NCBI RefSeq assembly: GCF_000315625.1
Contig: NW_005434620.1
Location: forward strand, 91,719 to 155,718
Direction: 5' to 3'
From: Guillardia theta CCMP2712
Lineage: Eukaryota; Protista; Cryptophyta
DNA: 64,000 bases
How positions within the stretch are numbered: the stretch's first letter is position 1; every line of letters starts with the position of its first letter. Both the position numbers and the translations under genes were made by a program. The notes under the pieces are model-generated. The model searched no databases. It worked only from the letters and a program-made list of their open reading frames with translations, and was not told where the DNA came from. Below, piece by piece: positions 31,366 through 47,235 of the stretch.

Positions 31366-34300
31366 TTACTCATGGTGGTTATACATTTCATGCTGATGGA
31401 TTCGACTGTATCTGGACGCATCTCTTTCAACCCTACCGATCGTGTCAGAGCTCGGAGTTCACCATGAAGAAAATGACAAACCGCATGTAATGTGTCGTCC
31501 CCGTCTTGAAGGCCAAGTTTTCTATGAACTCCATGTCGTGCGAGATCACAATCAGCTGAAATGTGTCTGACTCCGCCTTTCGTTCATTCACCAGCCGTGA
31601 AAGGGCATCAGTGAATCCCTCTATATTCCTGAAGGACGGGTCAGCACAGGACTAGCGTCTCGGTCAAAACTTCAGTGCTTCTTTCAGCTCACTTTGCGTC
31701 TAGGTTCGATGTTGGCTCATCCAACGCTAGGATCCTGCGATCAATTCAGAGGGGTCTTTGAGAGACGATCTGCAAATACCCGCAGTTGTGACAGAATGTT
31801 TCTGCAAGTGCAAGCCTGACGACCAAGGAGGCTAAGACCTGTTCTGTATATCAGAGAGCTGTGATCTTCTATGATCAGTGGACACCTTCTGTCCTGCAGA
31901 ACACCTTCCGCGCATATCCAGCTCAACAGCATCTAGACATTTCATGACCTTGACAATTTGAATGAGTGGCACATTAAAACATATCAACCTATACCAGGCG
32001 ATAGTTGTGAGTCCGGCGATTGTTGGATTCGTCGACATCCGTTTTGATTTCGATGTAAGCGATATCATCGCCCCGATAGGTATTCTGTCGAAAGCTTACA
32101 ATTTGATAAGGAGATTGGTATTCTGACCTGCCAGAACTCTTTCAAAGACTGATTGATCTGCTCCATCTGACGAAGCAAGACTCAACTTAAAACTAATTAC
32201 CAATTGGTGGGACTTCACCTTTAACGTGTGAAACTTGACAAGAGCTCTGTCTAATGCTTTGTAGCTCTTGTCTAAGTCTTGTTCAGCGATTCTTTTCGCA
32301 TTAAGCTTCACAAGCTCCAAAGCATAAATCTTATCGATATCTTGGTATTCACTTTTACGTAGTTCTGACTCGCATCCCCGTATTCCCTCGGCATCCCGTT
32401 CCTGCGAAGCATTTGAATTTCCCGATTCGTCATTAGTTGGAAACAAACCAAAGATCCACGGATTTGATTTATTGTGGCTTTGATGCCATCCACTCTTTGG
32501 ATCAACTCTTTTTGTTTCTATCAGCATTTTCTGTTATATGAACACTAATCTGCAAGCAAAAGTACTCGTTTTAGGTCTTGGATTTTGCTTGCGCTCGGGA
32601 TCTCTTTTCGAATAGCAGCAATATCCCGATGGCATTGCTCACAATCGCTTTCACATTTTTTGAACTTCAAAAAGGCTTCGATGGACCTGAAAGACTTTGA
32701 GATAAGCAGCCTTGATATAACATTCATCACCAAATCATTTCTTGCATGTTTCTGTCTGATTCCTGGTTTCCTTTATCGATGCTAATCTCGCTTAACCTGC
32801 TCTCATATTCCTGATACGAGTGAGGTCGACATCACATGGTTGATTCATTTCTTACCTTCTGCTTTTTCTCTTCCTCTTTAATTCTTCCTTCCACATCACG
32901 AATTGCCTTGTCTAGCGAGCTTCTCGAAGAATTATATATTTCTGAGTCGAACGATTTCAACTGGAATAATTTCTCCTTCATCGAGTGAAGCTGGGAAAGG
33001 AATTATTCGAACGGAATTTGAAAGGATGCAGGCTACCTTAGAATCGTTCTCGTTTTGAAGAGAATCAATTTCTTTTTGTAAGTTCTTTTTTTCTGCTTCC
33101 TTTTCAGAAAGCAATTTTTCATCGTGCACTTGATCTTTTTGTGCCTTCTGGATTTCTATGATGGCGTTTTCCTTTTGTTTCTTGAACCCTTCGAGTTCAC
33201 GTTGATTTTGTAACTTTGTCTGATCGAATTTTTCCTTTTCACTTGAGAATAACGATACTTTCTTCTGCAAAGAATTCTCTTTCTCTTGGCACACCTCTCT
33301 CTCTTTGAATAGAGCATCTATCTTTGTGTCCAATTCGATACAAGCATCTTGTAATTCTTTCTTTCTGGCAATCAAGCTTTCATATGAAGAATTTTGACCA
33401 TCATCCTGAGCAGTATCGGAGACCTTGGAATCCGAAAGTTCTGATTTCATTCTTGCAAGAGACTTAAGATCCATCTCATCCAATATACTTGTCAATTGAT
33501 TTACCTTCTCATCATGCTCCTCTGCCTCTTGTTTGCGCTTTGTCAATGCTTCTTGGGAGTCGATGGCAGAAGCTTTGATTGCAGAAAGTTCCTCCGCTTC
33601 TTTTGACTTCTCCAAAAGCTGAGCCTCAAGTCCTTTCAGTTCTTGCCGAAGCTCGCATGCATGCGCGACATGTCCGATCTTTTTGTCCACTTCCATGATT
33701 TGCTCTTCGAGTTTTTTCAAGACTTCGGGTGTGACATCTGCCTGTAGCGATGCGCATTTTGATTTTATCTTTTCCAGCTGTCTCTCCGATTCCACCTGTT
33801 TTGCACAAATTGGACATTTATGATGTTCAGAAGCAAATTTTTCAAAAGTTTCAACCAAAGATTTCAGGCTCCTATTTGCAACACACTGCTGATTTAGAAT
33901 TTCCTTATCATTGTTCAAACTTTTGGTCAATCTTTCTAGGTTCGCATCAACGTCCGAACCTAGCATGGATTCTCGGGTTGCTCCTCCCTTGACAGCAGAT
34001 TCTTGAGATCGATTTCTTAGGTCTTCACAACTCTTTTTGAGCTCATCCATTTCTGAACTGACTTTGCGAAGATTAGAATCTGAAGTTTCCAGAGTTTGTT
34101 GATGTTGAAACATCTCATTTTTGATTCTGTCCATGTTCCGTCTACTTTCTTGGGACAATGTCGCGATGTCGTTTGCATTTTGCAGGGATTCCAGGTCGGG
34201 GCGAAACTTCATTATTTCTTGAAATTTTCTATCATTTTGGGCAAGTATTTCATTGGCTTTTGCAAGACGCGATTCGTAATCTCGTTGCTTATGTTTCCAG

Positions 34301-35916
34301 GATATGTATTCGTCATGTTCGCATCTCCTCCTATTCAGTTCAGCTTCAATTTGTTCCATTTCAAGCTTCTTGTTCTCTTTCTCACCCCTAAATTCATCAA
34401 TCCTCCTTGTAAACCGTTCTTGGCCACCTGATTCCTTGAGTTCATCCAATTCTTGCTGAACTTTCGTGATTTCAACCTCCCGTTCTTCCCACATTTTGTC
34501 ATTGGAAGAGAGAAGAGATTGCTTTTCGTTCAGGATTTTGATTTGTTTTTCAGCATCATCCATTACCTCTTTCTTTCTATCCTGAAGATCTGCATTCGAT
34601 TTTGTTTTGTACTGAAGATGACTGATAATCTTGTGACACTCCAAGAAGTAAGCCTTTTTCTTTTCCAGATCTATCTGATGCTGACTTTGTTGTGCATTGA
34701 TAGCATCTCCAAATACACGAGAAAACGACGATTCTATACTAATCCCCACTTCATTCACATCTGTTTTGTCAAGTGAATATTCACTTGCGATATCCTTACA
34801 GAATTTGAGCCTTTCCTCTTTTTTCGTTTCCAGGAGTTGCTTGTCTCTAATGAGATTGCTTTTGTCATTCTTGAGCCGTGAAATATTCTCCTGACAGTCA
34901 TTCAACTTGCCTTTCACATCGTTCTCTTCGTTTACAAGATTTTCGAAAGATTCTTGACAATCGCGGTCTTGGACCTTCAAATCTGCCAAGAGCGATTCCA
35001 ATGTATTCACATCCTCGGTAAATTCCTGTTTCACGTCTGCTTCTGCTTGGGCTTTGAATTTTTCAAGAGTCTCAAGCCTTCCTTCCAAGCTTTTCACTTG
35101 AGTTTCTTTGTCAGCGTATTCATCAATCGTATTGGACAAATTTTGCAGCTCTTGTTCAGCGTTCTTGCAGTTCTTTTCATGCATTTCAATCTGTCTTTTC
35201 CCCTCTTCACTCCTTTGCTGATAATTTTGAAGATTTTCTCGTTGTTGCTTTGCATGATCTCTGTTTGTCCGTAACCTGTTGACTCTTTCGTGAATTTCTT
35301 TCAATTCAGTTTTTGTTTCCTGCTGGGTCTTCCTAATTGATTCAAGCGCCTTCGCATATTTTGTCGAAGCAAATATCGCATCGAATTTCTCTTTGATGGA
35401 CCTTGAATCCCCAAGAATCCAGTTCGACTCTTCCTGATGACAGAATATGACATGTTGCAACAGTGCTTTTGTCACACCCATCATTATGGGGACAACATTG
35501 TCATCGCCACATTTTCTGTTCATGGACTCAGCTTCCTTGTTGGCACTCTTGATTTCAATTTCGCTGCTCACTTTCCTGTACTGCTGCTTTTGTTCCGACT
35601 TGTTGGCAAGCTCAAAAGTCTGCTTGACTGTTACTTGCTCTCCGTTGAGACGAGAGAATCGCATTCGAATCAGAGACGAGGTCTTGGTCCTGTTCGACGC
35701 TCTGGGGTCGTGGATGAAGGATTGTCCGGAAGATGCATGGGGGGGAAGCGCCCCGGATGTGATCATTCGCAAGCATTCGATGATGGTAGTTTTCCCACTT
35801 CCATTCTTTCCCAGAATCAGAGTGAGAGGGCATCCGAATTGAATTGTCTGCTTATCACGGTCATCTGGTCCGTATGACCTGATTCCTTGAATGAGGAGCT
35901 TGTCTACTGTCGTCAT
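31366..35916 (-). CDS. RAD50: DNA repair ATPase RAD50
   Basis: KLLIQGIRSY; Walker A GKNGSGKTT; IFCHQEESNW; zinc hook CPIC; signature DMRGRCSAGQK; Walker B LALDEPTSNLD; QLIVISHD. Confidence 0.97.
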
Positions 35917-36344
35917 TCAACGGGTTCGCAAGAAAACCTGTTCTGTTCTTCTCTTACCCTTCTTTCCTTGTTCTGTTCTTCTCTTACCAATTCTTTCCTT
36001 CTTCCTTGCTCGCTTGCTGCCTTCCTCGCCCTGGGTGGTGCGGCTTTCTCAGCAACTCCTGGTCGCAAAGGGGGGTAGGGTGCTACACCCCATCCGTTCC
36101 CTCTCATGACCCACCCTACCGAAGGACAATGCGATTGGTTGATCTACCCCATCTCTTGGTACATCTTATTACTACCCCTACCATCAATTTTATATCAAAT
36201 CTCCAAGTTTTCCACCCGAACCACCGTGTTGTCTACCACCCCTTCACATCGATCGAGATAAACCACCCCCATAAGAATCCCCACCCTTCAATTCTCTGAC
36301 CCCCTCTTCTCACGCATACGGTAGTACCCGCAGTTGTTTCTCAA

Positions 36345-36353
36345 TTTCCCGCC
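36345..36353 (+). promoter_or_regulatory. Candidate E2F/DP site TTTCCCGCC
   Basis: Exact match to the E2F consensus, ~430 bp upstream of the RAD50 ATG, in a divergent intergenic region. Confidence 0.45.
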
Positions 36354-37099
36354 AAATTCGAGGTTTGTGGTTCTCGGACCTCCGGCGAAAAGCGAACTTG
36401 CTACTACTGCAGTGCGGGCCGGGCCGGTGGCGTCGCCGGCCGGGTCACCAGGACGGCACGGCCCTCAGGGCTCCGGGCCCGGGGGCGGCCCGGCACTGTC
36501 CGACCGGGCCCGGCCCGGGCTCCGGGCCCGCTCACTCACTGTCAGTTATGGTATTAGTAAAAAGCCGTGAGATGGTAGGTTGGCCGGGCATGAAAGAATA
36601 TTTTCAAATTTGGTTCTAAACTTTTAATTTTCTGCAGAGATAATTTAAACATATTCAAAAGACACGGCGAATCGGAAAAGCTCGTGTTCACGGGAGAGAA
36701 AAACTCGCCCCCAAGCCCGCCTCCTCTTGACAACCCCCGGGCCCTGCAACCTTGCTTCGAGGCATGCAGGCGCCAACAGCGGCCATCGGGGACGTGAGGA
36801 AAGCAAGGAGAAGTCGACACTTGCGCATGGAGAGAAGAGGAAGAGGCCCAGGAGTGTGTCAGAGATCAACAAGTGATCGAGAGAGCAAACATCTTCAAAT
36901 AAGGAAGGAAAAAAAATTAACAACAGAAGAGTGAACGCAGATGCAAGCAGAGTCTTGACCATTCTTGATCCAACAAGCTGAGCCAATAAGATCGCTACTA
37001 CGCTAGACAGTACCCTGCCAACCCGACAATTTTCCTCGTTGAAACCGCAGAAGCAAAGATAGAAGGCGCATTATAGTTCATTTGCAGCAGATTGCAAGT

Positions 37100-37594
37100 A
37101 TGGATGAATTGTACAACATGCACAGGACCGGAGGCTCCGTGACCGTCACGCCCAAGCGATCGGCTGACGGCAGGAGCGTCTATGACGTCCAGCTTGACCT
37201 GGCCATCGTCGAGCCTCTCTTCCACATGCGTCAGGAGGACGCGGCCAAGTTCTTGGTAAGCACACATGTTGCTATGCTTGCTTCTTGTCGAGTCCGCCTT
37301 GATGCGCGCGTGCTCTCAACCCGACCATGGCAGGGCATCTCCTTGACGAGCCTGAAGAAAGCCTGTCGCACCCTCGGCATCCAGCGATGGCCGTACGCGC
37401 GCATGCGCGACAGGACGCGAGCAACCCGGCCCAGGCGGCAGGAGAAGCGCGGGATGACTGAGGCCCCGGAGGAGGAGCACGGGGGAGCGACGAAGGTCAT
37501 CGAGGGTGATGAGAAAGACGACGACAACAAGAACGATGGAGGAGGAGGTAAGGAGGAGGAGGAGGAGGAGGAGGAGGGCCAGGAGGGAGCCAAT

Positions 37595-37656
<62 letters not shown>

Positions 37657-38245
37657 AGACGAGGAGCTGGATGGGGAGCAGGAGAACGGCCTGGAGGGCA
37701 AAGCAGAAGGGAACAGGAAAGCAGTGGTGGTCGCCAAGTACAAGGCATTGGATCTGGAAAGCAAAGTCACAAAGATGAAAAATAATGTCACGTCCGCTGG
37801 CGAGGGGGAAGGAAACGTCAAACAAGAAGAGGAATCTGAGAATGCAGAGGGGCAGGCGACAATGGCGACGACGAGCAGCAGCAGCACTGGGCCCAGCACT
37901 CCCGGCGCCAGGCAACGGCAGCCCACGCATGACCTACAGGGCCCTGCCCCTCCAAGTCTCATGCCGCCTGCACCGCCCCCCGCCTCTCTTCCGAGCTCAC
38001 AATCCAGCTCCGAGGTCAGCGCCAACGAGTCGTCAAGCAGCAGGACAGGCGACGCGGCGAGCAACGCACGTCGGAGCAGGGGGGTGACGAGGTCGCGGGA
38101 GTCGATCGACAACAAGTGGCTGGACTGGTACTTGTCATGCGAGAAAGGCTTCAAGGCTTGTGACCGGGTGAGCGGCACTCACGGTGCGGCAGGCAGCCCG
38201 GTCCGACCCGGCCCAGTGACCTCAATTCGGAGCCTAGTACTGTAA
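37100..38245 (+). CDS. RWP-RK domain transcription factor, copy 1 (5' exons uncertain; unique insert and 3' end)
   Basis: LAIVEPLFHMRQEDAAKFL | intron 37256-37333 | GISLTSLKKACRTLGIQRWPYAR, followed by an acidic tail. Confidence 0.85.
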
Positions 38246-38925
38246 ATCTCACCGGGAGGCCGGGCTTGACTCTGACACTGTCGCATAGGCCACTGGCACA
38301 TGGCGTTGACCGTCGACTCACTGAGAAGAGAAGAACTTCGGAACTTGGAAGGGCAGGCTTCGGAAAGCGACACAGTGAGAACCACAAGAGTCTGTGACTT
38401 TCAAGTTTCAATCATCCGGCGGCACTCACAGTGAGGCCGAGAGTCACTCGGATCACCGTTGGCGACAGTGATCGATTATCCTCGTACTGATTTTTAACTT
38501 AACTTTGCGTAAACTGAGAGATCGACCGTCCGATCGGATCCGACCCGCGGGCCACCGTAGAGTCGGTGGCACAGTCCGATCCGGGGCCCGGGGACGGTCA
38601 CCGCCGGGGCGAGGCCAGGGCCGCCGGCCCGCTGTAGTACAAATGTCTTATTATTGCCCCCACGCTTTCGGAAATTATTTACCCCCAGTTTCAGGCAAAA
38701 AGGTCAAGACTACCCGTCCTTTCATACTTCGAGGTAGGGGTCAATAATATGGGGTAGGGGGTCATCGAAGCGGGGGTGAGTTGTTTTTCATGGCCTTTCA
38801 CTCCTCACCTGTCTCTTCGCCTCCTGCGCTTCCTCCGCGTGCCCCCATCCCGTCCTCACACTTTGTTCCTTCAGTCTCTGCTCCTGCCTCAGCTCCTCCT
38901 CATTTCTTTCTCACTGATACCCTCC

Positions 38926-39562
38926 ATTGTGATTTTCTTACCCGTTCCCCCTCTTCAACCCGGAGCTTCTGTTAGATTGCTTTCCAACTTTGTTTCGATG
39001 ACCAATACCGAGTTTTCCTGCATCACCTCTACCTCAACCCTGTACTATTTTTCAATGTCGTGCAGAGTGAGCTTCAAGCTTGATGTGAAGGTTCAGGTTC
39101 ATTGCTGCCTTTTTAGGATTGATTTTCTTACCCGTTCCCCCACTTTCAACCCGGATCTTCTGTTAGATTGCTTTCCAAGTGAATTGTTTTGATTACCAAT
39201 TGTACCAATACCGAGTTTTCCTGCATCACCTCTACCTCAACCCTGTACTATTTTTCAATGTCGTGCAGAGTGAGCTTCAAGCTTGATGTGAAGGTTCAGG
39301 TTCATTGCTGCCTTTTTAGGATTGATTTTCTTACCCGTTCCCCCTCTTCAACCCGGATCTTCTGGTTAAACCCTTAGACTGCATTAACTTAATGTATCTT
39401 CTGTTAGATTGCTTTCCAAGTGAATTGTTTTGATTACCAATTGTACCAATACCGAGTTTTCCTGCATCACCTCTACCTCAACCCTGTACTATTTTTCAAT
39501 GTCGTGCAGAGTGAGCTTCAAGCTTGATGTGAAGGTTCAGGTTCATTGCTGCCTTTTTAGGA
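38926..39562. repeat. Tandem triplication of a ~190-240-bp unit
   Basis: TGATTTTCTTACCCGTTCCCC...ACCAATACCGAGTTTTCCTGCATCACC...TGCCTTTTTAGGA occurs three times, with a near-identical core. Confidence 0.95.
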
Positions 39563-39743
39563 GATGTATGCTGATTTGGCATTGGATCAAAGCAGTAGCA
39601 AACATCCTCAGAAAGGAGCCGATTGTTTTGTTTGATATTGCAAGAGTCCGAAGTAGTATGAATCACGTATATGCAAGAAGCTCTTGCCCATCTATGTGGA
39701 AGATCAAGAAATTTTCTGTTTTAGTGTAGGGATCCGTCGGTGA

Positions 39744-42292
39744 GCGAGATTTGCTTTAAGCTTCTTGCTCGCACTGGCCAGCTCAGCACTCGCTCGGTGA
39801 TGTAGTGTTGAGTTTCGATTCCATGCTGTCATGTGGGTTGTGAATGAAGACGCGGTAAACCGATATGGAGGAGGGACTTGCTCTTTCTCTGTGTGAGCCC
39901 TTCCGTGCTGCCTCTTTCATGCTGCTTCAGCTTTACCCGCCACAGCAGAAACCCTCCTCGCATGCATCCGATGGTGAGGTCTGCAGAGACTGACGAGCGG
40001 GAGGGCTCACCCAGGAAGGAGCGCATGTGAAGACAGGGGAGCAGGAAGAGAAGGAGACAGGAAAGGAAGGTCACGAGGGTGCGAGATGAAAGAGAGGAAG
40101 GGCGAGGATGGGCGAGAAGGGAGGTCTAGGAGCAACGGACATTGTGTCTATCAAGGATCGCTGTGGGGACATGGGATAAAAGAAAGAAGCTGCAGGGACG
40201 CCAGCGATAAGCGAAGGGAAGGGGGGGGGAGGGGAGGAAGCGCAGGGAGGACGGAGGGAGAGTAGTTTGAGGGAAGGGGTGCATTTCAAGGGCGAGGGTG
40301 GGTGGTGATCCGGGTCGAGGGAAGGGGTCGGGGGTCAGGGAATCCACCCAAAGGAAAGGGGCGTGGAAAGGGACCGAGAGGAGAGAGGGGGTGGGGTGGA
40401 GGAGAGTAGGGGACGGTACGACGGCACAAGGCTGGTCTAAGGCAGGTAGGGTGATGGGGCAAGCAGGGGTGGATGGCTGCCAGGGTGATCCTGAAGCAAG
40501 AGGAGGACGCACCCCCTTGTTCGACTGCGCACTACCCCACCCTCGAGGACTGAGGATGCCCTAAGCTTAGCCTCAGCAGACTCATCATGGAGGCAGGGAG
40601 GAGGAGGATGGGGAGGGAAGGCGGGGAGGTGTACAGGCCGCCTTAAAGGAGAGAGGCGCTACGGCAGGGCAGAGGAGGTCGCCATGACGCGACGACTGAC
40701 AGCGGTGTTTGCGACCGGAGAAGCGAGGACGAGGAGGATAACACACAAGGTCGCCGACGCTGCCGACAGGCAGGCAGGGCTTGCGGGACATGATCGACAA
40801 GTCAAGCATCGCAAGTGGGCATGCGGGCAGGAGGTGAAGACATGACAGGGTCGAAGGGGCTTGCGATGAGCGAGGAGAGAGAGATAGGAAGAGAAAGACT
40901 CATAAAGCGCGCATGACTGCTCGAGGCGATCCTTGATGACGTAGCTGTGAGCTCACAACGAGGCTGTCTGCCCCGTGCCATGGCGTCGTCGTAGACGTCT
41001 GCTGATGTCGTCAGGCCCTGGTAAGCAAGAGCATGTCATGCTAGGGCGCGTGATCGTCTTGCCTCGTCCACACATGGTACGTTGGTCTCTGGTGAGCGTG
41101 AGGAGGCGCTCCGAGCAGCGTCATCGTCGAAGACGACATTGGCACAGAGGCACGGACTGAGAGCTTAGCACGTTCATCTACACTCACACGCCCTCAGCGG
41201 GTTCACGACTCCTGATCCTCGCATGACAAGTACCAGTCCAGCCACTTGTTGTCGATCGACTCCCTCGACCTCGTCACCCCCCTGCTCCGTGCGTTGCTCG
41301 CCGCGTCGCCTGTCCTGCTGCTTGACGACTCGTTGGCGCTGACCTCGGAGCTGGATTGTGAGCTCGGGAGAGAGGCTGGGGGCGGTGCAGGCGGCATGAG
41401 ACTTGGAGGGGCAGGGTCCTGTAGGTCATGCGTGGGCTGCCGTCGCCTGGCGCCGGGAGTGCTGGGTACATACCTACTGCTGCTGCTCGTCGTCGCCATC
41501 GCCTCCTCGTCCTCGTCCTCGTCCTCATTGTTCTCGTCCTCGTCCTCGTCCTCGTCCTCATTGGCTCCCTCCTGGCCCTCCTCCTCCTCCTTACCTCCTC
41601 CTCCATCGTTCTTGTTGTTGTTGTTGTTGTCGTCGTCGTCTTTCTCATCACCCTCGATGACCTTCGTCGCTCCCCCGTCCTCCTCCTCCTTGGCCTCAGT
41701 CATCCCGCGCTTCTCCTGCCGCCTGGGCCGGGTTGCTCGCGTCCTGTCGCGCATGCGCGCGTACGGCCATCGCTGGATGCCGAGGGTGCGACAGGCTTTC
41801 TTCAGGCTCGTCAAGGAGATGCCCTGCCATGGTCGGGTTGAGAGCACGCGCGCATCAAGGCGGACTCGACAAGAAGCAAGCATAGCAACATGTGTGCTTA
41901 CCAAGAACTTGGCCGCGTCCTCCTGACGCATGTGGAAGAGAGGCTCGACGATGGCCAGGTCAAGCTGGACGTCATAGACGCTCCTGCCGTCAGCCGATCG
42001 CTTGGGCGTGACGGTCACGGAGCCTCCGGTCCTCGCCGGGTCGCTCATGGTCAGCGTTGCAGCTTGGGGTGGCGGGCAGAGCGTTACTCGAGCTGTTGCA
42101 TGCTGTCTGCTGGGTGAGAGTGAAGGAGGGGTGGGTCTGGCGGGGTAGGGGCTAGTTGGCTTGAGTTTGGCTGTGGAGGAGGGAGGGGTCGACGTCTGAG
42201 CTCCTCCTCGTCATCGGTCTGGGCCCGTCCTGCAGGGGGGGAGAGCGCATTCTGCTTAGGCGAGGGGGAGATTCTTTTTTGGAGTTTTTTTA
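39744..42292 (-). repeat. Left arm of a large inverted repeat
   Basis: Reverse complement of 43035-45685. Outer end GCGAGATTTGCTTTAAG; inner end GGAGTTTTTTTA. Confidence 0.95.
41203..42048 (-). CDS. RWP-RK domain transcription factor, copy 2
   Basis: Same domain and 78-nt intron as copies 1 and 3; ends KWLDWYLSCEDQES*. Confidence 0.9.
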   Translation of the reverse strand: MSDPARTGGSVTVTPKRSADGRSVYDVQLDLAIVEPLFHMRQEDAAKFLVSTHVAMLASCRVRLDARVLSTRPWQGISLTSLKKACRTLGIQRWPYARMRDRTRATRPRRQEKRGMTEAKEEEDGGATKVIEGDEKDDDDNNNNNKNDGGGGKEEEEGQEGANEDEDEDEDENNEDEDEDEEAMATTSSSSRYVPSTPGARRRQPTHDLQDPAPPSLMPPAPPPASLPSSQSSSEVSANESSSSRTGDAASNARSRGVTRSRESIDNKWLDWYLSCEDQES

Positions 42293-43034
42293 GGTCTTGT
42301 CTAACTTCGATCAGGGGGTTGTCACCCCTATTCTTGTAGGGTGGGGTGTGGTATTCCCGGGGGTAGTGGTACCTCTGTACGGCATCATCAGGGCAGGGTT
42401 ATTGGAAACAGCTTGTTGTCTCCTTCGCTGGATTTTCAGGGGTGGGGTAGATACCAGAGGTAGGGTAGGGTGAACAGTTTTTGAGTTTGATTATTGGGGT
42501 GGTAATTGGGGCAAGCACCCCTGTTGCATCCTCGTTGTGGACCTCCTGTGAGATTTGACTCCGCACCGCGGAAACCTTTTCTCCTCTCCTCATCTGTTGA
42601 TGATGACGGAGCAAGGTATTTGACCGCTGTTGTTGTATTGGTTACCGTTGATATCTCATTAGAAGTATGACTTTGGAGTCACGCATTGCAGGTGCAAGGG
42701 TGTGCTGCTCTACCATGAACTACGGTCACTTTCACACTAATCGGTGCAGCGCGCAAGCAACCTGAATGTGAAATTTTCGAAAGAAATCTAGAGAGGGGTC
42801 TTTCTCTATGGCCTCACACACCAATCTCTGTGTCCTTTCTAGATATCAGTTGGATGAAACTACTATTGTATTGATGTAAAGAAAGCATGCAAGTGCGGTC
42901 CTTTTCCCACCCTCCGCAAGTTCAATTCGATATGCCACCCTAGCTACTAGTTTACTCACCCCACCCCCCATACAAAAATAAGACACTACCCACCTACCAC
43001 CAAAACAAAAGAAAAAAAAAGATGGAGAAATAAT

Positions 43035-43779
43035 TAAAAAAACTCCAAAAAAGAATCTCCCCCTCGCCCAAGCAGAATGCGCTCTCCCCCCCTGCAGGAC
43101 GGGCCCCGACCGATGACGAGGAGGAGCTCAGACGTCGACCCCTCCCTCCTCCACAGCCAAACTCAAGCCAACTAGCCCCTACCCCGCCAGACCCACCCCT
43201 CCTTCACTCTCACCCAGCAGACAGCATGCAACAGCTCGAGTAACGCTCTGCCCGCCACCCCAAGCTGCAACGCTGACCATGAGCGACCCGGCGAGGACCG
43301 GAGGCTCCGTGACCGTCACGCCCAAGCGATCGGCTGACGGCAGGAGCGTCTATGACGTCCAGCTTGACCTGGCCATCGTCGAGCCTCTCTTCCACATGCG
43401 TCAGGAGGACGCGGCCAAGTTCTTGGTAAGCACACATGTTGCTATGCTTGCTTCTTGTCGAGTCCGCCTTGATGCGCGCGTGCTCTCAACCCGACCATGG
43501 CAGGGCATCTCCTTGACGAGCCTGAAGAAAGCCTGTCGCACCCTCGGCATCCAGCGATGGCCGTACGCGCGCATGCGCGACAGGACGCGAGCAACCCGGC
43601 CCAGGCGGCAGGAGAAGCGCGGGATGACTGAGGCCCCGGAGGAGGAGGACGGGGGAGCGACGAAGGTCATCGAGGGTGATGAGAAAGACGACGACGACGA
43701 CGACGACGACGACAACAACAACAACAACAACGATGGAGGAGGAGGTAAGGAGGAGGAGGAGGGCCAGGAAGGAGCCAAT

Positions 43780-43839
<60 letters not shown>

Positions 43840-45685
43840 GCGATGGCGACGACGAGCAGCAGCAGTAGGTATGTACCCAGCACTCCCGGCGCCAGGCGAC
43901 GGCAGCCCACGCATGACATACAGGACCCTGCCCCTCCAAGTCTCATGCCGCCGGCACCTCCCCCCGCCTCTCTCCCGAGCTCACAATCCAGCTCCGAGGT
44001 CAGCGCCAACGAGTCGTCAAGCAGCAGGACAGGCGACGCGGCGAGCAACGCACGGAGCAGGGGGGTGACGAGGTCGCGGGAGTCGATCGACAACAAGTGG
44101 CTGGACTGGTACTTGTCATGCGAGGATCAGGAGTCGTGAGCCCGCTGAGGGCGTGTGAGTGTAGATGAACGTACTAAGCTCTCAGTCCGTGCCTCTGTGC
44201 CAATGTCGTCTTCGACGAGCATGACGCTGCTCGGAGCGCCTCCTCACGCTCACCAGAGACCAACGTACCGCCATGTGTGGACGAGGCAAGACGATCACGC
44301 GCCCTAGCATGACATGCTCTTGCTTACCAGGGCCTGACGACATCAGCAGACGTCTACGACGACGCCATGGCACGGGGCAGACAGCCTCGTTGTGAGCTCG
44401 CAGCTACGTCATCAAGGATCGCCTCGAGCAGTCATGCGCGCTTTATGAGTCTTTCTCTTCCTATCTCTCTCTCCTCGCATGTCTTCACCTCCTGCCCGCA
44501 TGCCCACTTGCGATGCTTGACTTGTCGATCATGTCCCGCAAGCCCTGCCTGCCTGTCGGCAGCGTCGGCGACCTTGTGTGTTATCCTCCTCGTCCTCGCT
44601 TCCGGTCGCAAACACCGCTGTCAGTCGTCGCGTCATGGCGACCTCCTCTGCCCTGCTCACTGCCGTAGCGCCTCTCTCCTTTAAGGCGGCCTGTACACCT
44701 CCCCGCCTTCCCTCCCCATCCTCCTCCTCCCTGCCTCCATGATGAGTCTGCTGAGGCTAAGCTTAGGGCATCCTCAGTCCTCGAGGGTGGTGCGTCCTCC
44801 TCTTGCTTCAGGATCACCCTGGCAGCCATCCACCCCTGCTTGCCCTATCACCCTACCTGCCTTAGACCAGCCTTGTGCCGTCGTACCGTCCCCTACTCTC
44901 CTCCACCCCACCCCCTCTCTCCTCTCGGTCCCTTTCCACGCCCCTTTCCTTTGGGTGGATTCCCTGACCCCCGACCCCTTCCCTCGACCCGGATCACCAC
45001 CCACCCTCGCCCTTGAAATGCACCCCTTCCCTCAAACTACTCTCCCTCCGTCCTCCCTGCGCTTCCCCGCCTCCCTCCCCCTTCGCTTCCCCGCCTCCCT
45101 CCCCCTTCGCTTATCGCTGGCGTCCTCGCAGCTTCTTTCTTTCATCCCATGTCCCCACAGCGATCCTCGGTAGACACAATGTCCGTTGCTCCTACACCTC
45201 CCTTCTCGCCCATCCTCACCCTTCCTCTCTTTCATCTCGCACCCTCGTGACCTTCCTTTCCTGTCTCCTTCTCTTCCTGCTCCCCTGTCTTCACATGCGC
45301 TCCTTCCTGGGTGAACCCTCCCGCTCGTCAGTCTCTGCAGACCTCACCCGTCTGCTCCCCCCTCGCGTTCCTCCCTCTTGACTCCTTTGCCTAGCAAGCT
45401 GATCTCAGACATGCACATGTGTTCAAAGGCGCAGGCAGCAGCTCTGTTCGCCCGTCATCGGATGCATGCGAGGAGGGTTTCTGCTGCGGCGGGTAAAGCT
45501 GAAGCAGCATGAAAGAGGCAGCACGGAAGGGCTCACACAGAGAAAGAGCAAGTCCCTCCTCCATATCGGTTTACCGCGTCTTCATTCACAACCCACATGA
45601 CAGCATGGAATCGAAACTCAACACTACATCACCGAGCGAGTGCTGAGCTGGCCAGTGCGAGCAAGAAGCTTAAAGCAAATCTCGC
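43035..45685 (+). repeat. Right arm of a large inverted repeat
   Basis: Reverse complement of 39744-42292, with scattered SNPs and indels, including ~110 bp at ~45348-45457 absent from the left arm. Confidence 0.95.
43279..44139 (+). CDS. RWP-RK domain transcription factor, copy 3
   Basis: MSDPARTGGSVTVTPKR...FHMRQEDAAKFL | intron 43426-43503 | GISLTSLKKACRTLGIQRWPY. Confidence 0.9.
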
Positions 45686-47235
45686 GTTGCAAGCAACATC
45701 AGTTTGATTCCGGATGCTGAAACATCTCAGGATACACACAACGTTTTTCCATCATCCAAAACTTCCATTGTGCTAATTTCTGATCTCAATGTTCCTCAAA
45801 CAACTATTCCTATCAATGTATTCGTGATCCTTCTCCCTATTCTGCTGAAAATCACGCCATGAAGGTTTGACAAGGTGATGGTCAAGGTATGTGTAAACTG
45901 AATACATTGTTACATGAACCACGAGACAGAGACATTTTCTGATAGACGACCCGCTGAATAACAGGTTCATGATTTCTGCTTAGAGATAGAATTGCTGATA
46001 ATTCGTGCGATAGTATAAAAGCTTAATGAATGCCTTTCAGACATTGCTTGTTGGCACCAACACAAACAAACTACATGGCACTGCAGGATGCTATCGCTTC
46101 ATCGTCATCAAAATGCGCAAGTGAAGTCTATGAAGAGGATAAAGTTATCAGGAACTTGAATGTTATGAACACTACCAGTTCTGATCTCCATCTGACTCTA
46201 ATCTCGAAACACGTTCCAAATAAAACATTTGTTATGTTACTTCCAACAACCACTTTTAGATTATATGGTCTGAAGTTATCTACATCCCATACTTATGTTT
46301 GTATGCTATTTGTTTGTTGAGCATGAATATCTTCTAGAGGAGTGATGGTGGGTCAAGGTCTGCATGCCTGGAAACAGTGAAATGACATACAACCTCAATG
46401 GAACGAAGCAAAATATCGTACCTGTCTACCAACTGCTTCTGCATTTCGAATTTTGCATAAATGGCAAGCAGGTGGTGCTATGGGGACAGGAGAGGAGATG
46501 TGAGCATGAATCATCGTGGGATGAAGTGAAGACAGCACAGGAAGTCCGAGGGGGCAGTGAGAGGATCATGTCTGAAACCGCATGGCATGAAAACTCAAAA
46601 TTTACCCCTGGATGTTCTACCCCCTACCCCTTTTAATGCTGCCACCCTACCCTAGAGAAAAACGTTCCCCCGCCCTACTAAAATATGCCCCCTCCCACCC
46701 CCTACCCCCTTCAAGTAACGTCTGGTGAGGAGGTGTGTTACATCGACAGTTTCTTTCTGGTATTCTCCTAAGATCAACCGCTAATGATATGAGGAATGCC
46801 CCTTCTCTCAAGATACTTTCACCCCCCACCCCCTTACTCTAGGTATCCCCACCCCGACGTCCAAACACCTCGAAAATTGACCCCCATTCCCTACCTCCTG
46901 GGCCTCGCTACCACCCCTGCTAGAGGATTGCTTCTCAGCCTCCTTCTCATTTCACCCCTTAGCAATAGATATTTCATAAACATTTCATTAATCAAATAGC
47001 CATATGTATGCCTCTAGCCTCTTTTAGAACGCAACCACCTCTACCAGGTGGCCACTGTGTGGATTGCCCCTAGATCTACCCCGTACCCACTCCACATCAG
47101 ATGTTATTTCAAGCCTGCCCCACCGAAAGTCGATTTCGCCTTCAAATTTCAACAAACCTCTATTTATTGTGCTGTCTTTTTATTAGTACATAATTATCAC
47201 TCGAGGCGGACCCGTTCGGGTATTTGTCGATAGAT

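What the first reader, a model, noticed from the sequence alone, without database searches (positions are those of the whole stretch)
37100..45685. RWP-RK transcription-factor gene triplicated as +/-/+, with copies 2 and 3 forming a ~2.6-kb-arm head-to-head palindrome
Seen: arms 39744-42292 and 43035-45685 are near-identical inverted copies around a 742-bp spacer, so both genes share one divergent upstream region. A third, direct copy lies ~3 kb to the left. The arms differ by SNPs and indels, so they are not a simple read-flip. Known: RWP-RK factors (MID, RKD, NLP) control mating type, gamete identity and nitrogen responses, and palindromic gene pairs can be maintained by arm-to-arm gene conversion. 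Inference: this is a dosage-amplified or conversion-maintained regulatory cassette, possibly for differentiation or sex.
Basis: partly seen in the sequence, partly recalled or inferred. Interest (0 to 1): 0.75.

Follow-up and report, generated by a model that had tools for sequence, protein, structure and literature searches.

The report
Palindromic RWP-RK gene pair, Guillardia
Two nearly identical copies of a small transcription-factor gene face each other in a 2.6-kb-arm palindrome, with a third partly overwritten copy nearby, but this alga (Guillardia theta) has hundreds of such genes in dozens of similar tandem and inverted clusters, so the locus is an ordinary example of local duplication and gene conversion rather than a special sex or dosage cassette.

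Summary
Arms 39744-42292 and 43035-45685 are inverted copies around a unique 742-bp spacer: 2496 aligned bases, 31 substitutions (1.24%) and 10 indels, with no assembly gap. Each arm carries one RWP-RK gene (PF02042) whose domain is split by an in-frame 78-nt intron. A third copy (37100-38245) shares only the interior of the coding sequence.

The genome is Guillardia theta (87.1 Mb, 669 contigs). A six-frame PF02042 search gave 571 candidates. All 150 that were scored pass Pfam's cut-off, and most sit in clusters. In loci sampled elsewhere, seven other inverted neighbour pairs are 97-100% identical in protein, and two palindromes are as large as this one.

Copy 1 is as close to copies 2 and 3 inside the coding sequence as they are to each other. 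Its flanks, start and stop are unrelated, which points to ectopic gene conversion. Nothing links the locus to sex, nitrogen or dosage beyond family membership.

This scan had already noted arrays and conversion of RWP-RK genes on other DNA of this genome (s1-436909, s1-448816).

Verdict: a real, ordinary member of a very large lineage-specific family. Low interest.

The parts
37100..38245 (+). Copy 1, an RWP-RK gene. Exon 1 is 37100-37255, the in-frame intron 37256-37333, and exon 2 37334-38245. Only 37124 to about 38143 is homologous to the arms. It has a private insertion of about 170-200 nt near 37690-37860 and its own start and C-terminal tail.
39744..42292 (-). Left arm of the palindrome, consisting of the copy 2 gene plus about 1.46 kb of C/T-rich 3' flank and 244 nt upstream of its ATG.
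41203..42048 (-). Copy 2, an RWP-RK gene. Exon 1 is 42048-41902, the intron 41901-41824, and exon 2 41823-41203.
42293..43034 (.). Unique 742-nt spacer at the centre of the shared divergent upstream region. It holds no tRNA and no Rfam match, and has no other copy in the genome.
43035..45685 (+). Right arm of the palindrome, consisting of the copy 3 gene plus about 1.55 kb of C/T-rich 3' flank. ORFs in that flank have no Pfam match.
43279..44139 (+). Copy 3, an RWP-RK gene. Exon 1 is 43279-43425, the intron 43426-43503 (GTAAGC...GGCAG), and exon 2 43504-44139.
37124..37465 (+). Stretch identical in all three copies. It covers part of exon 1, the whole intron and the RWP-RK-coding start of exon 2, and is the likely gene-conversion tract.
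   Evidence: (D3, I3)

Best explanation
The locus holds three paralogues of a small, Guillardia-specific subfamily of RWP-RK-only transcription factors. Each protein has an N-terminal RWP-RK DNA-binding domain, an acidic D/E-rich middle that probably acts as an activation region, and a conserved C-terminal motif ID..WL.WYLSCE. Copies 2 and 3 arose by an inverted segmental duplication of about 2.6 kb that copied the gene, 244 nt of upstream sequence and 1.5 kb of 3' flank. They are either very young (about 1% diverged) or kept alike by arm-to-arm exchange. Copy 1 is an older neighbour with its own promoter, start codon and tail, and the interior of its coding sequence has been overwritten by ectopic gene conversion from copies 2/3 (or the reverse). 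The locus is one of dozens of tandem and inverted RWP-RK clusters produced by ongoing local duplication, conversion and divergence in a family of several hundred genes. Shown here: the structure, the domain, the intron position, the family size and the recurrence of such pairs. Inferred: conversion as the cause of the sharp identity borders, and the activator function.
For: Divergence is no lower in the coding exon 2 (2.09%) than in the 3' flank (1.14%), as expected for a young or homogenised duplicate rather than an old pair held alike by selection. In well-aligned CDS the three copies are equidistant, with about 3-4 private differences each, while copy 1's flanks are only 37-45% alignable. 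Its ATG and stop lie outside the shared tract. The arm and spacer are unique in the genome, so they are not a transposon. The genome is G. theta: the best named hits are GUITHDRAFT proteins, and P0001 maps back to contig C540. Annotated paralogues P0001-P0003 read ...DAAKFL|GISLT... across the same junction, which confirms the intron. Both halves of the domain are also detected on either side of it. Family size: 571 candidates, with all 150 scored above the cut-off. Recurrence: inverted repeats of 200 nt or more at 91% identity or more occur in 13 of 18 other sampled RWP-RK loci. These include arms of at least 3.4 kb at C19, which holds the closest paralogues, and 2.6-kb arms at C50. Other algae and plants have 0-15 such genes.
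Against: No read-depth, long-read or transcript data were available, so neither the assembly of the palindrome nor expression is verified. No protein matching these three genes exists in the 5.8-billion-protein collection, so they are unannotated and could be silent. The substitution-free 528-nt stretch between the arms (43108-43635) is only marginally unusual: my rough scan estimate is p of about 0.02, and it is not significant once substitutions in low-complexity repeats are set aside. Arm-to-arm conversion is therefore not demonstrated. The sampled loci were chosen because they showed opposite-strand neighbours, so the 13 of 18 figure is not an unbiased rate.
Confidence: 0.78

Rival explanations
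1. The palindrome is old and conversion-maintained. The head-to-head pair predates the split from the C19 paralogues, and its arms are kept near-identical by continual intrachromosomal gene conversion, as in Y-chromosome palindromes.
For: The closest paralogues on C19 are also a head-to-head pair, 100% identical in protein, within a palindrome of at least 3.4 kb. Its arm identity is patchy, running 99.3, 93.6, 99.6 and 96.5% along successive segments. Conversion clearly operates at this locus, as copy 1 shows.
Against: No homology outside the CDS links the C19 and C54 palindromes, so a shared ancestral palindrome is not shown. Many loci carry pairs at all levels of divergence from 40 to 100%, which fits repeated independent duplication followed by decay.
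Confidence: 0.15
2. The locus is a functionally special cassette, with dosage-amplified regulators of mating type, gamete identity or nitrogen response.
For: The only support is family membership. RWP-RK factors include MID, RKD and NLP (established knowledge; the preprint read makes the same link for cryptophytes).
Against: Hundreds of paralogues exist, with many equivalent pairs. There is no PB1 or GAF domain. The neighbourhood consists of ordinary genes. The subfamily has no detectable relatives outside G. theta.
Confidence: 0.04
3. The palindrome is an assembly artefact, with two alleles or chimeric clones laid down as an inverted repeat.
For: The arms differ by about 1% plus indels, as alleles might. 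The assembly is a draft of 669 scaffolds with gaps elsewhere in the window.
Against: There is no gap anywhere in 37100-45685. The orientation is inverted around a unique spacer, which allelic redundancy does not normally produce. The same architecture occurs at many other RWP-RK loci on other contigs.
Confidence: 0.03

Closest known systems
RKD-type (RWP-RK-only) transcription factors of plants and green algae, including Chlamydomonas MID
   Same: These are short proteins whose only recognised domain is RWP-RK. By the TAPscan v4 rule (RWP-RK present, NLP domain absent) they would be classed as RKD (file 20).
   Different: The domain is N-terminal and split by an intron. The motif reads RWPYAR rather than RWPxRK. 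The subfamily has its own C-terminal ID..WL.WYLSCE motif. Family size is at least 150 here, against 1-14 RKD genes in Archaeplastida and 0-15 in other microalgae. Orthology to MID or RKD was not tested.
NLP / NIT2 nitrate-response RWP-RK factors
   Same: They share the RWP-RK DNA-binding domain.
   Different: No PB1 and no GAF-like N-terminal domain was detected. The proteins are about 260-360 aa rather than about 900.
Other tandem and inverted RWP-RK gene arrays of Guillardia theta (scan notes s1-436909 and s1-448816)
   Same: Same genome, same family, near-identical neighbouring copies, and conversion-like identity restricted to the domain-coding part. I confirmed this independently.
   Different: This locus is a single palindrome with long arms (2.6 kb, including 1.5 kb of non-coding 3' flank) plus one converted neighbour, not a multi-unit array.
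Palindromic ampliconic gene pairs maintained by arm-to-arm gene conversion (for example on primate Y chromosomes)
   Same: Near-identical inverted arms surround a unique spacer, with one gene per arm.
   Different: The arms are a thousand-fold shorter. Maintenance by conversion is not shown here, and a young duplication explains the data equally well.

Membership tests
RWP-RK domain family (Pfam PF02042) | Match to the family HMM above the gathering score | tested here: met
   Scores are 41.5, 42.5 and 42.4 bits against a 29.3 cut-off for the three read-through ORFs. Exon 2 alone scores 34.4 bits. The match covers HMM positions 23-47 because the intron splits the domain, and a locally built profile detects the first half upstream of the intron.
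RWP-RK domain family (Pfam PF02042) | R-W-P core followed by basic residues (nominal motif RWPxRK) | tested here: met
   The sequence is GIQRWPYARMRD. The RWP core is present, but the literal RK is replaced by AR. Only 1 of 51 sampled domains in this genome has a literal RWPFRK, and RWPY[AKSTE]R is the commonest form.
RKD subfamily (TAPscan v4 rule) | RWP-RK present, NLP/PB1 domain absent | tested here: met
   RWP-RK is the only Pfam family at E of 0.01 or below. The rule is given (file 20). This is a classification rule, not evidence of orthology.
NLP (NIN-like proteins) | C-terminal PB1 domain and N-terminal GAF-like region | tested here: not met
   No PB1 or GAF match was found in any copy.
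MID-type mating-type determinant | Location in a mating-type locus, with presence limited to one mating type | not testable with these tools
   Only one strain's assembly is available. Neighbouring genes show nothing sex-related.
Conversion-maintained palindrome | Arms more alike within a genome than orthologous arms are between strains or species | not testable with these tools
   No second Guillardia genome is available. Arm identity of 98.8% is compatible with either youth or conversion.
Ectopic gene conversion between paralogues | Near-identity confined to a tract with sharp borders, between genes whose flanks are unrelated | tested here: met
   Identity is 99-100% over 37124-37499 and 94-100% over 37900-38099. 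It drops to 37-45% outside 37100-38199. Copy 1's start and stop codons lie outside the tract.

The most novel reading that the evidence does not exclude
Head-to-head and tail-to-tail palindromes may be a systematic mode by which Guillardia theta amplifies and homogenises a family of several hundred RWP-RK regulators. That would be a cryptophyte-specific regulatory radiation, an order of magnitude beyond any plant or alga surveyed, which I found described in no paper of the searchable library. In that reading, arm-to-arm and neighbour conversion would keep the DNA-binding domains identical while the tails diverge.
Probability: 0.15. Interest if true: 0.55.

Novelty: new member of a known kind. 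Interest (0 to 1): 0.25.

Why it matters
The locus by itself matters little. It is a clean small example of inverted duplication plus ectopic gene conversion. What deserves attention is the genome-wide picture it belongs to. Guillardia theta carries at least 150, and perhaps several hundred, RWP-RK domains, mostly in young local clusters. Plants, green and red algae, diatoms and haptophytes carry 0-15. In the papers I could search, the only related statement is a passing count of 56 such genes in Rhodomonas salina. Why a unicellular cryptophyte needs or tolerates so many regulators of this one class is an open question, but this locus gives no particular handle on it.

Tried and rejected
- **tRNA or non-coding RNA in the spacer.** A stretch near 42700 looked tRNA-like by eye, but ARAGORN and Rfam found nothing in 36000-47000.
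- **Transposon or dispersed-repeat origin of the arms or spacer.** Both are unique to this locus.
- **A second gene in the 1.5-kb 3' part of the arms.** The ORFs there are C/T-rich low-complexity sequence with no Pfam match.
- **Exon 1 alone against Pfam.** No hit, because it is too short.
- **Solved structures.** No relevant match.
- **Orthologues or annotated models of these three genes.** None were found, only three G. theta paralogues.
- **Literature on RWP-RK expansion in cryptophytes.** Five searches gave only a passing remark and comparison counts. One search was badly framed and useless.
- **Significance of the substitution-free stretch between arms.** Not robust once low-complexity sites are excluded.
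- An RWP-RK phylogeny against MID/RKD/NLP was not attempted, because the domain is 49 aa, no reference sequences were obtained from a tool, and it would not change the verdict.
Full report
**Observation**

The repeat finder recovers the inverted arms exactly as described: 39744-42292 against 43035-45685, with 742 nt between them. A full alignment shows collinear homology from end to end of both arms. Counted on that alignment, the arms share 2496 aligned positions with 31 substitutions (1.24%) and 10 indel events. The largest indel is 108 nt and is missing from the left arm. The region holds no N run; the window's three gaps lie elsewhere. In the whole 64-kb window, these are the only repeats of 250 nt or more. 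Neither the arm nor the spacer has another copy in the genome, so the arms are not a transposon.

**Genes**

Each arm carries one open frame, 41203-42048 on the minus strand and 43279-44139 on the plus strand. A third frame lies at 37082/37100-38245 on the plus strand. All three match Pfam RWP-RK above the cut-off, but only over HMM positions 23-47.

The reason is an in-frame 78-nt intron (GTAAGC...GGCAG) that splits the domain. In copy 3 it lies at 43426-43503, in copy 2 at 41901-41824 and in copy 1 at 37256-37333. Three annotated paralogues read ...DAAKFL|GISLT... straight across that point, which supports the splice. A profile built locally from sampled loci also detects both halves of the domain on either side of the intron.

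Exon 1 alone is too short to score, and exon 2 alone passes at 34.4 bits.

The proteins have the following layout:
- An N-terminal RWP-RK domain with the motif RWPYAR.
- A D/E-rich repeat region, where most arm differences and indels lie.
- A Ser/Pro-rich region.
- A C-terminal motif ID..WL.WYLSCE shared with the paralogues.

No PB1 or GAF domain is present. They are therefore RKD-like in the TAPscan sense, not NLP-like. No solved structure is related.

**Organism**

The assembly has 87,145,349 bases in 669 contigs. The only named relatives are GUITHDRAFT proteins of Guillardia theta CCMP2712, and one of them maps back to contig C540 of this assembly. The window is therefore nuclear DNA of that cryptophyte alga.

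None of the three genes has a matching protein in the 5.8-billion-sequence collection, either with the whole ORF or using the conserved N-terminus of a paralogue. They appear to be unannotated, and I have no evidence on expression.

**Third copy**

Copy 1 aligns to the arms only from 37124 to about 38143, and both flanks are unalignable. In 100-nt windows, identity to copies 2 and 3 behaves as follows:
- 99-100% over 37200-37499.
- 94-100% over 37900-38099.
- 37-45% outside 37100-38199.

In the well-aligned parts, each of the three copies has about three or four private differences. Copy 1 is therefore as close to copies 2 and 3 as they are to each other.

Copy 1 nevertheless has its own start codon, its own C-terminal tail and a private insertion of about 170-200 nt. 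A partial duplication that happened to land in frame between a foreign start and stop is far less likely than conversion of an older paralogue. I infer ectopic gene conversion. A stretch of 342 nt (37124-37465) is identical in all three copies, intron included.

**Is the locus special?**

It is not. A six-frame search of the genome with PF02042 found 571 first-look candidates. Only 150 were scored, and all 150 exceed the Pfam cut-off, the weakest at 49.5 bits against 29.3. The three genes of this window are not among them, because the intron halves their score. So 150 is a lower bound.

By my hand tally of the table, neighbour pairs within 5 kb number about 37 tandem, 16 head-to-head and 8 tail-to-tail.

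I fetched 18 other loci that showed opposite-strand neighbours; this is a deliberately biased sample. Thirteen of them contain inverted repeats of 200 nt or more at 91-100% identity. The largest are:
- C19:523800-533799, with arms of at least 3.4 kb that run to the edge of the fetched stretch.
- C50:288500-298499, with 2.6-kb arms holding two genes each.

The protein comparison shows near-identical neighbour pairs of all three kinds.

| Arrangement | Locus (contig) | Protein identity |
|---|---|---|
| Head-to-head | C19 | 100% |
| Head-to-head | C50 (two pairs) | 100% each |
| Head-to-head | C2 | 98.8% |
| Head-to-head | C1 | 97.5% |
| Tail-to-tail | C121 | 98.5% |
| Tail-to-tail | C89 | 97.6% |
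| Tandem, six genes at a 1528-bp period | C2 | 97-100% |

The C19 pair consists of the closest paralogues of the genes studied here.

Two earlier notes of this scan on other DNA of the same genome say the same. They are s1-436909, on arrays among hundreds of genes, and s1-448816, on conversion homogenising the domain. I reached both points independently.

**Mechanism**

Divergence between the arms is no lower in coding exon 2 (2.09%, inflated by the acidic repeats) than in the 3' flank (1.14%). It is zero over exon 1, the intron and the start of exon 2. This pattern fits a young duplication or homogenisation, not long-term selective conservation of an old pair.

The 528-nt substitution-free stretch is only marginally unusual. 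My rough estimate is p of about 0.02, and it is not significant if substitutions in low-complexity repeats are excluded. Arm-to-arm conversion is therefore possible but not shown. Conversion involving copy 1 is the better-supported exchange.

The divergent upstream region measures 1230 nt between the two ATGs. It consists of 244 nt of arm on each side plus the unique spacer. It holds no tRNA or Rfam family.

The neighbouring genes are ordinary: a Rad50-like AAA_23 ATPase, a TPR/kinase protein, an SF1 helicase, a MORN-repeat protein and a voltage-gated-type channel. Nothing suggests a mating-type region.

**Comparison and novelty**

Published counts of RWP-RK or RKD genes are 1-14 in 33 Archaeplastida (file 2) and 0-15 in seven microalgae. 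A preprint notes 56 in the cryptophyte Rhodomonas salina in passing. I found no paper describing the Guillardia expansion or its palindromic clusters. This absence refers only to the open-access library searched.

The locus itself is a new member of known kinds: an RWP-RK-only factor gene, an inverted segmental duplication and a paralogue conversion tract. The interesting matter is the family-wide radiation, which this locus merely samples.

**Limits**

No reads, transcripts or second strain could be examined. Assembly correctness, expression, and young versus conversion-maintained status all remain to be tested, as set out under next steps.

Noticed in passing
window 38474-38513: A short (about 40 nt) dispersed repeat lies just downstream of copy 1. 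It gives at least 46 matches at 85-98% identity on many contigs, with 697 first-look candidates. It may be a terminus of a small mobile element.
   Followed up: no
window 38952-39562: Three direct copies of a 167-nt unit, spaced 203 and 241 nt apart at 77-100% identity, lie between copy 1 and the left arm (D2).
   Followed up: no
G000:C2:281944-291187 (L011, L023): A tandem array of six RWP-RK genes at a 1528-bp period, 97-100% identical in protein, ends with one inverted copy.
   Followed up: partly
G000:C50:288500-298499 (L016): A nested palindrome carries two different RWP-RK genes in each 2.6-kb arm. Arm identity is 96-100% and the spacer is about 1 kb.
   Followed up: partly
G000:C19:523800-533799 (L015): The closest paralogues of the genes studied here also form a head-to-head palindrome. 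Its arms are at least 3.4 kb with patchy identity (93.6-99.6%) and reach the edge of the fetched stretch.
   Followed up: partly
window 37100-38245, 41203-42048, 43279-44139: None of the three genes has a matching protein in the 5.8-billion-protein collection, whereas their paralogues on C540, C122 and C19 are annotated as GUITHDRAFT proteins. They appear to be missing from the public gene set.
   Followed up: partly
sampled RWP-RK loci L002-L029: The name-giving RWPxRK motif is degenerate in this genome. Only 1 of 51 sampled domains reads RWPFRK, and [RK]WP[YF]x[RK] variants such as RWPYAR, RWPYKR and KWPYKF dominate.
   Followed up: partly
window 32932-35916 (-): An uninterrupted 994-aa ORF with AAA_23 / SMC_N (Rad50-like) N-terminal ATPase matches lies directly left of copy 1.
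   Followed up: no
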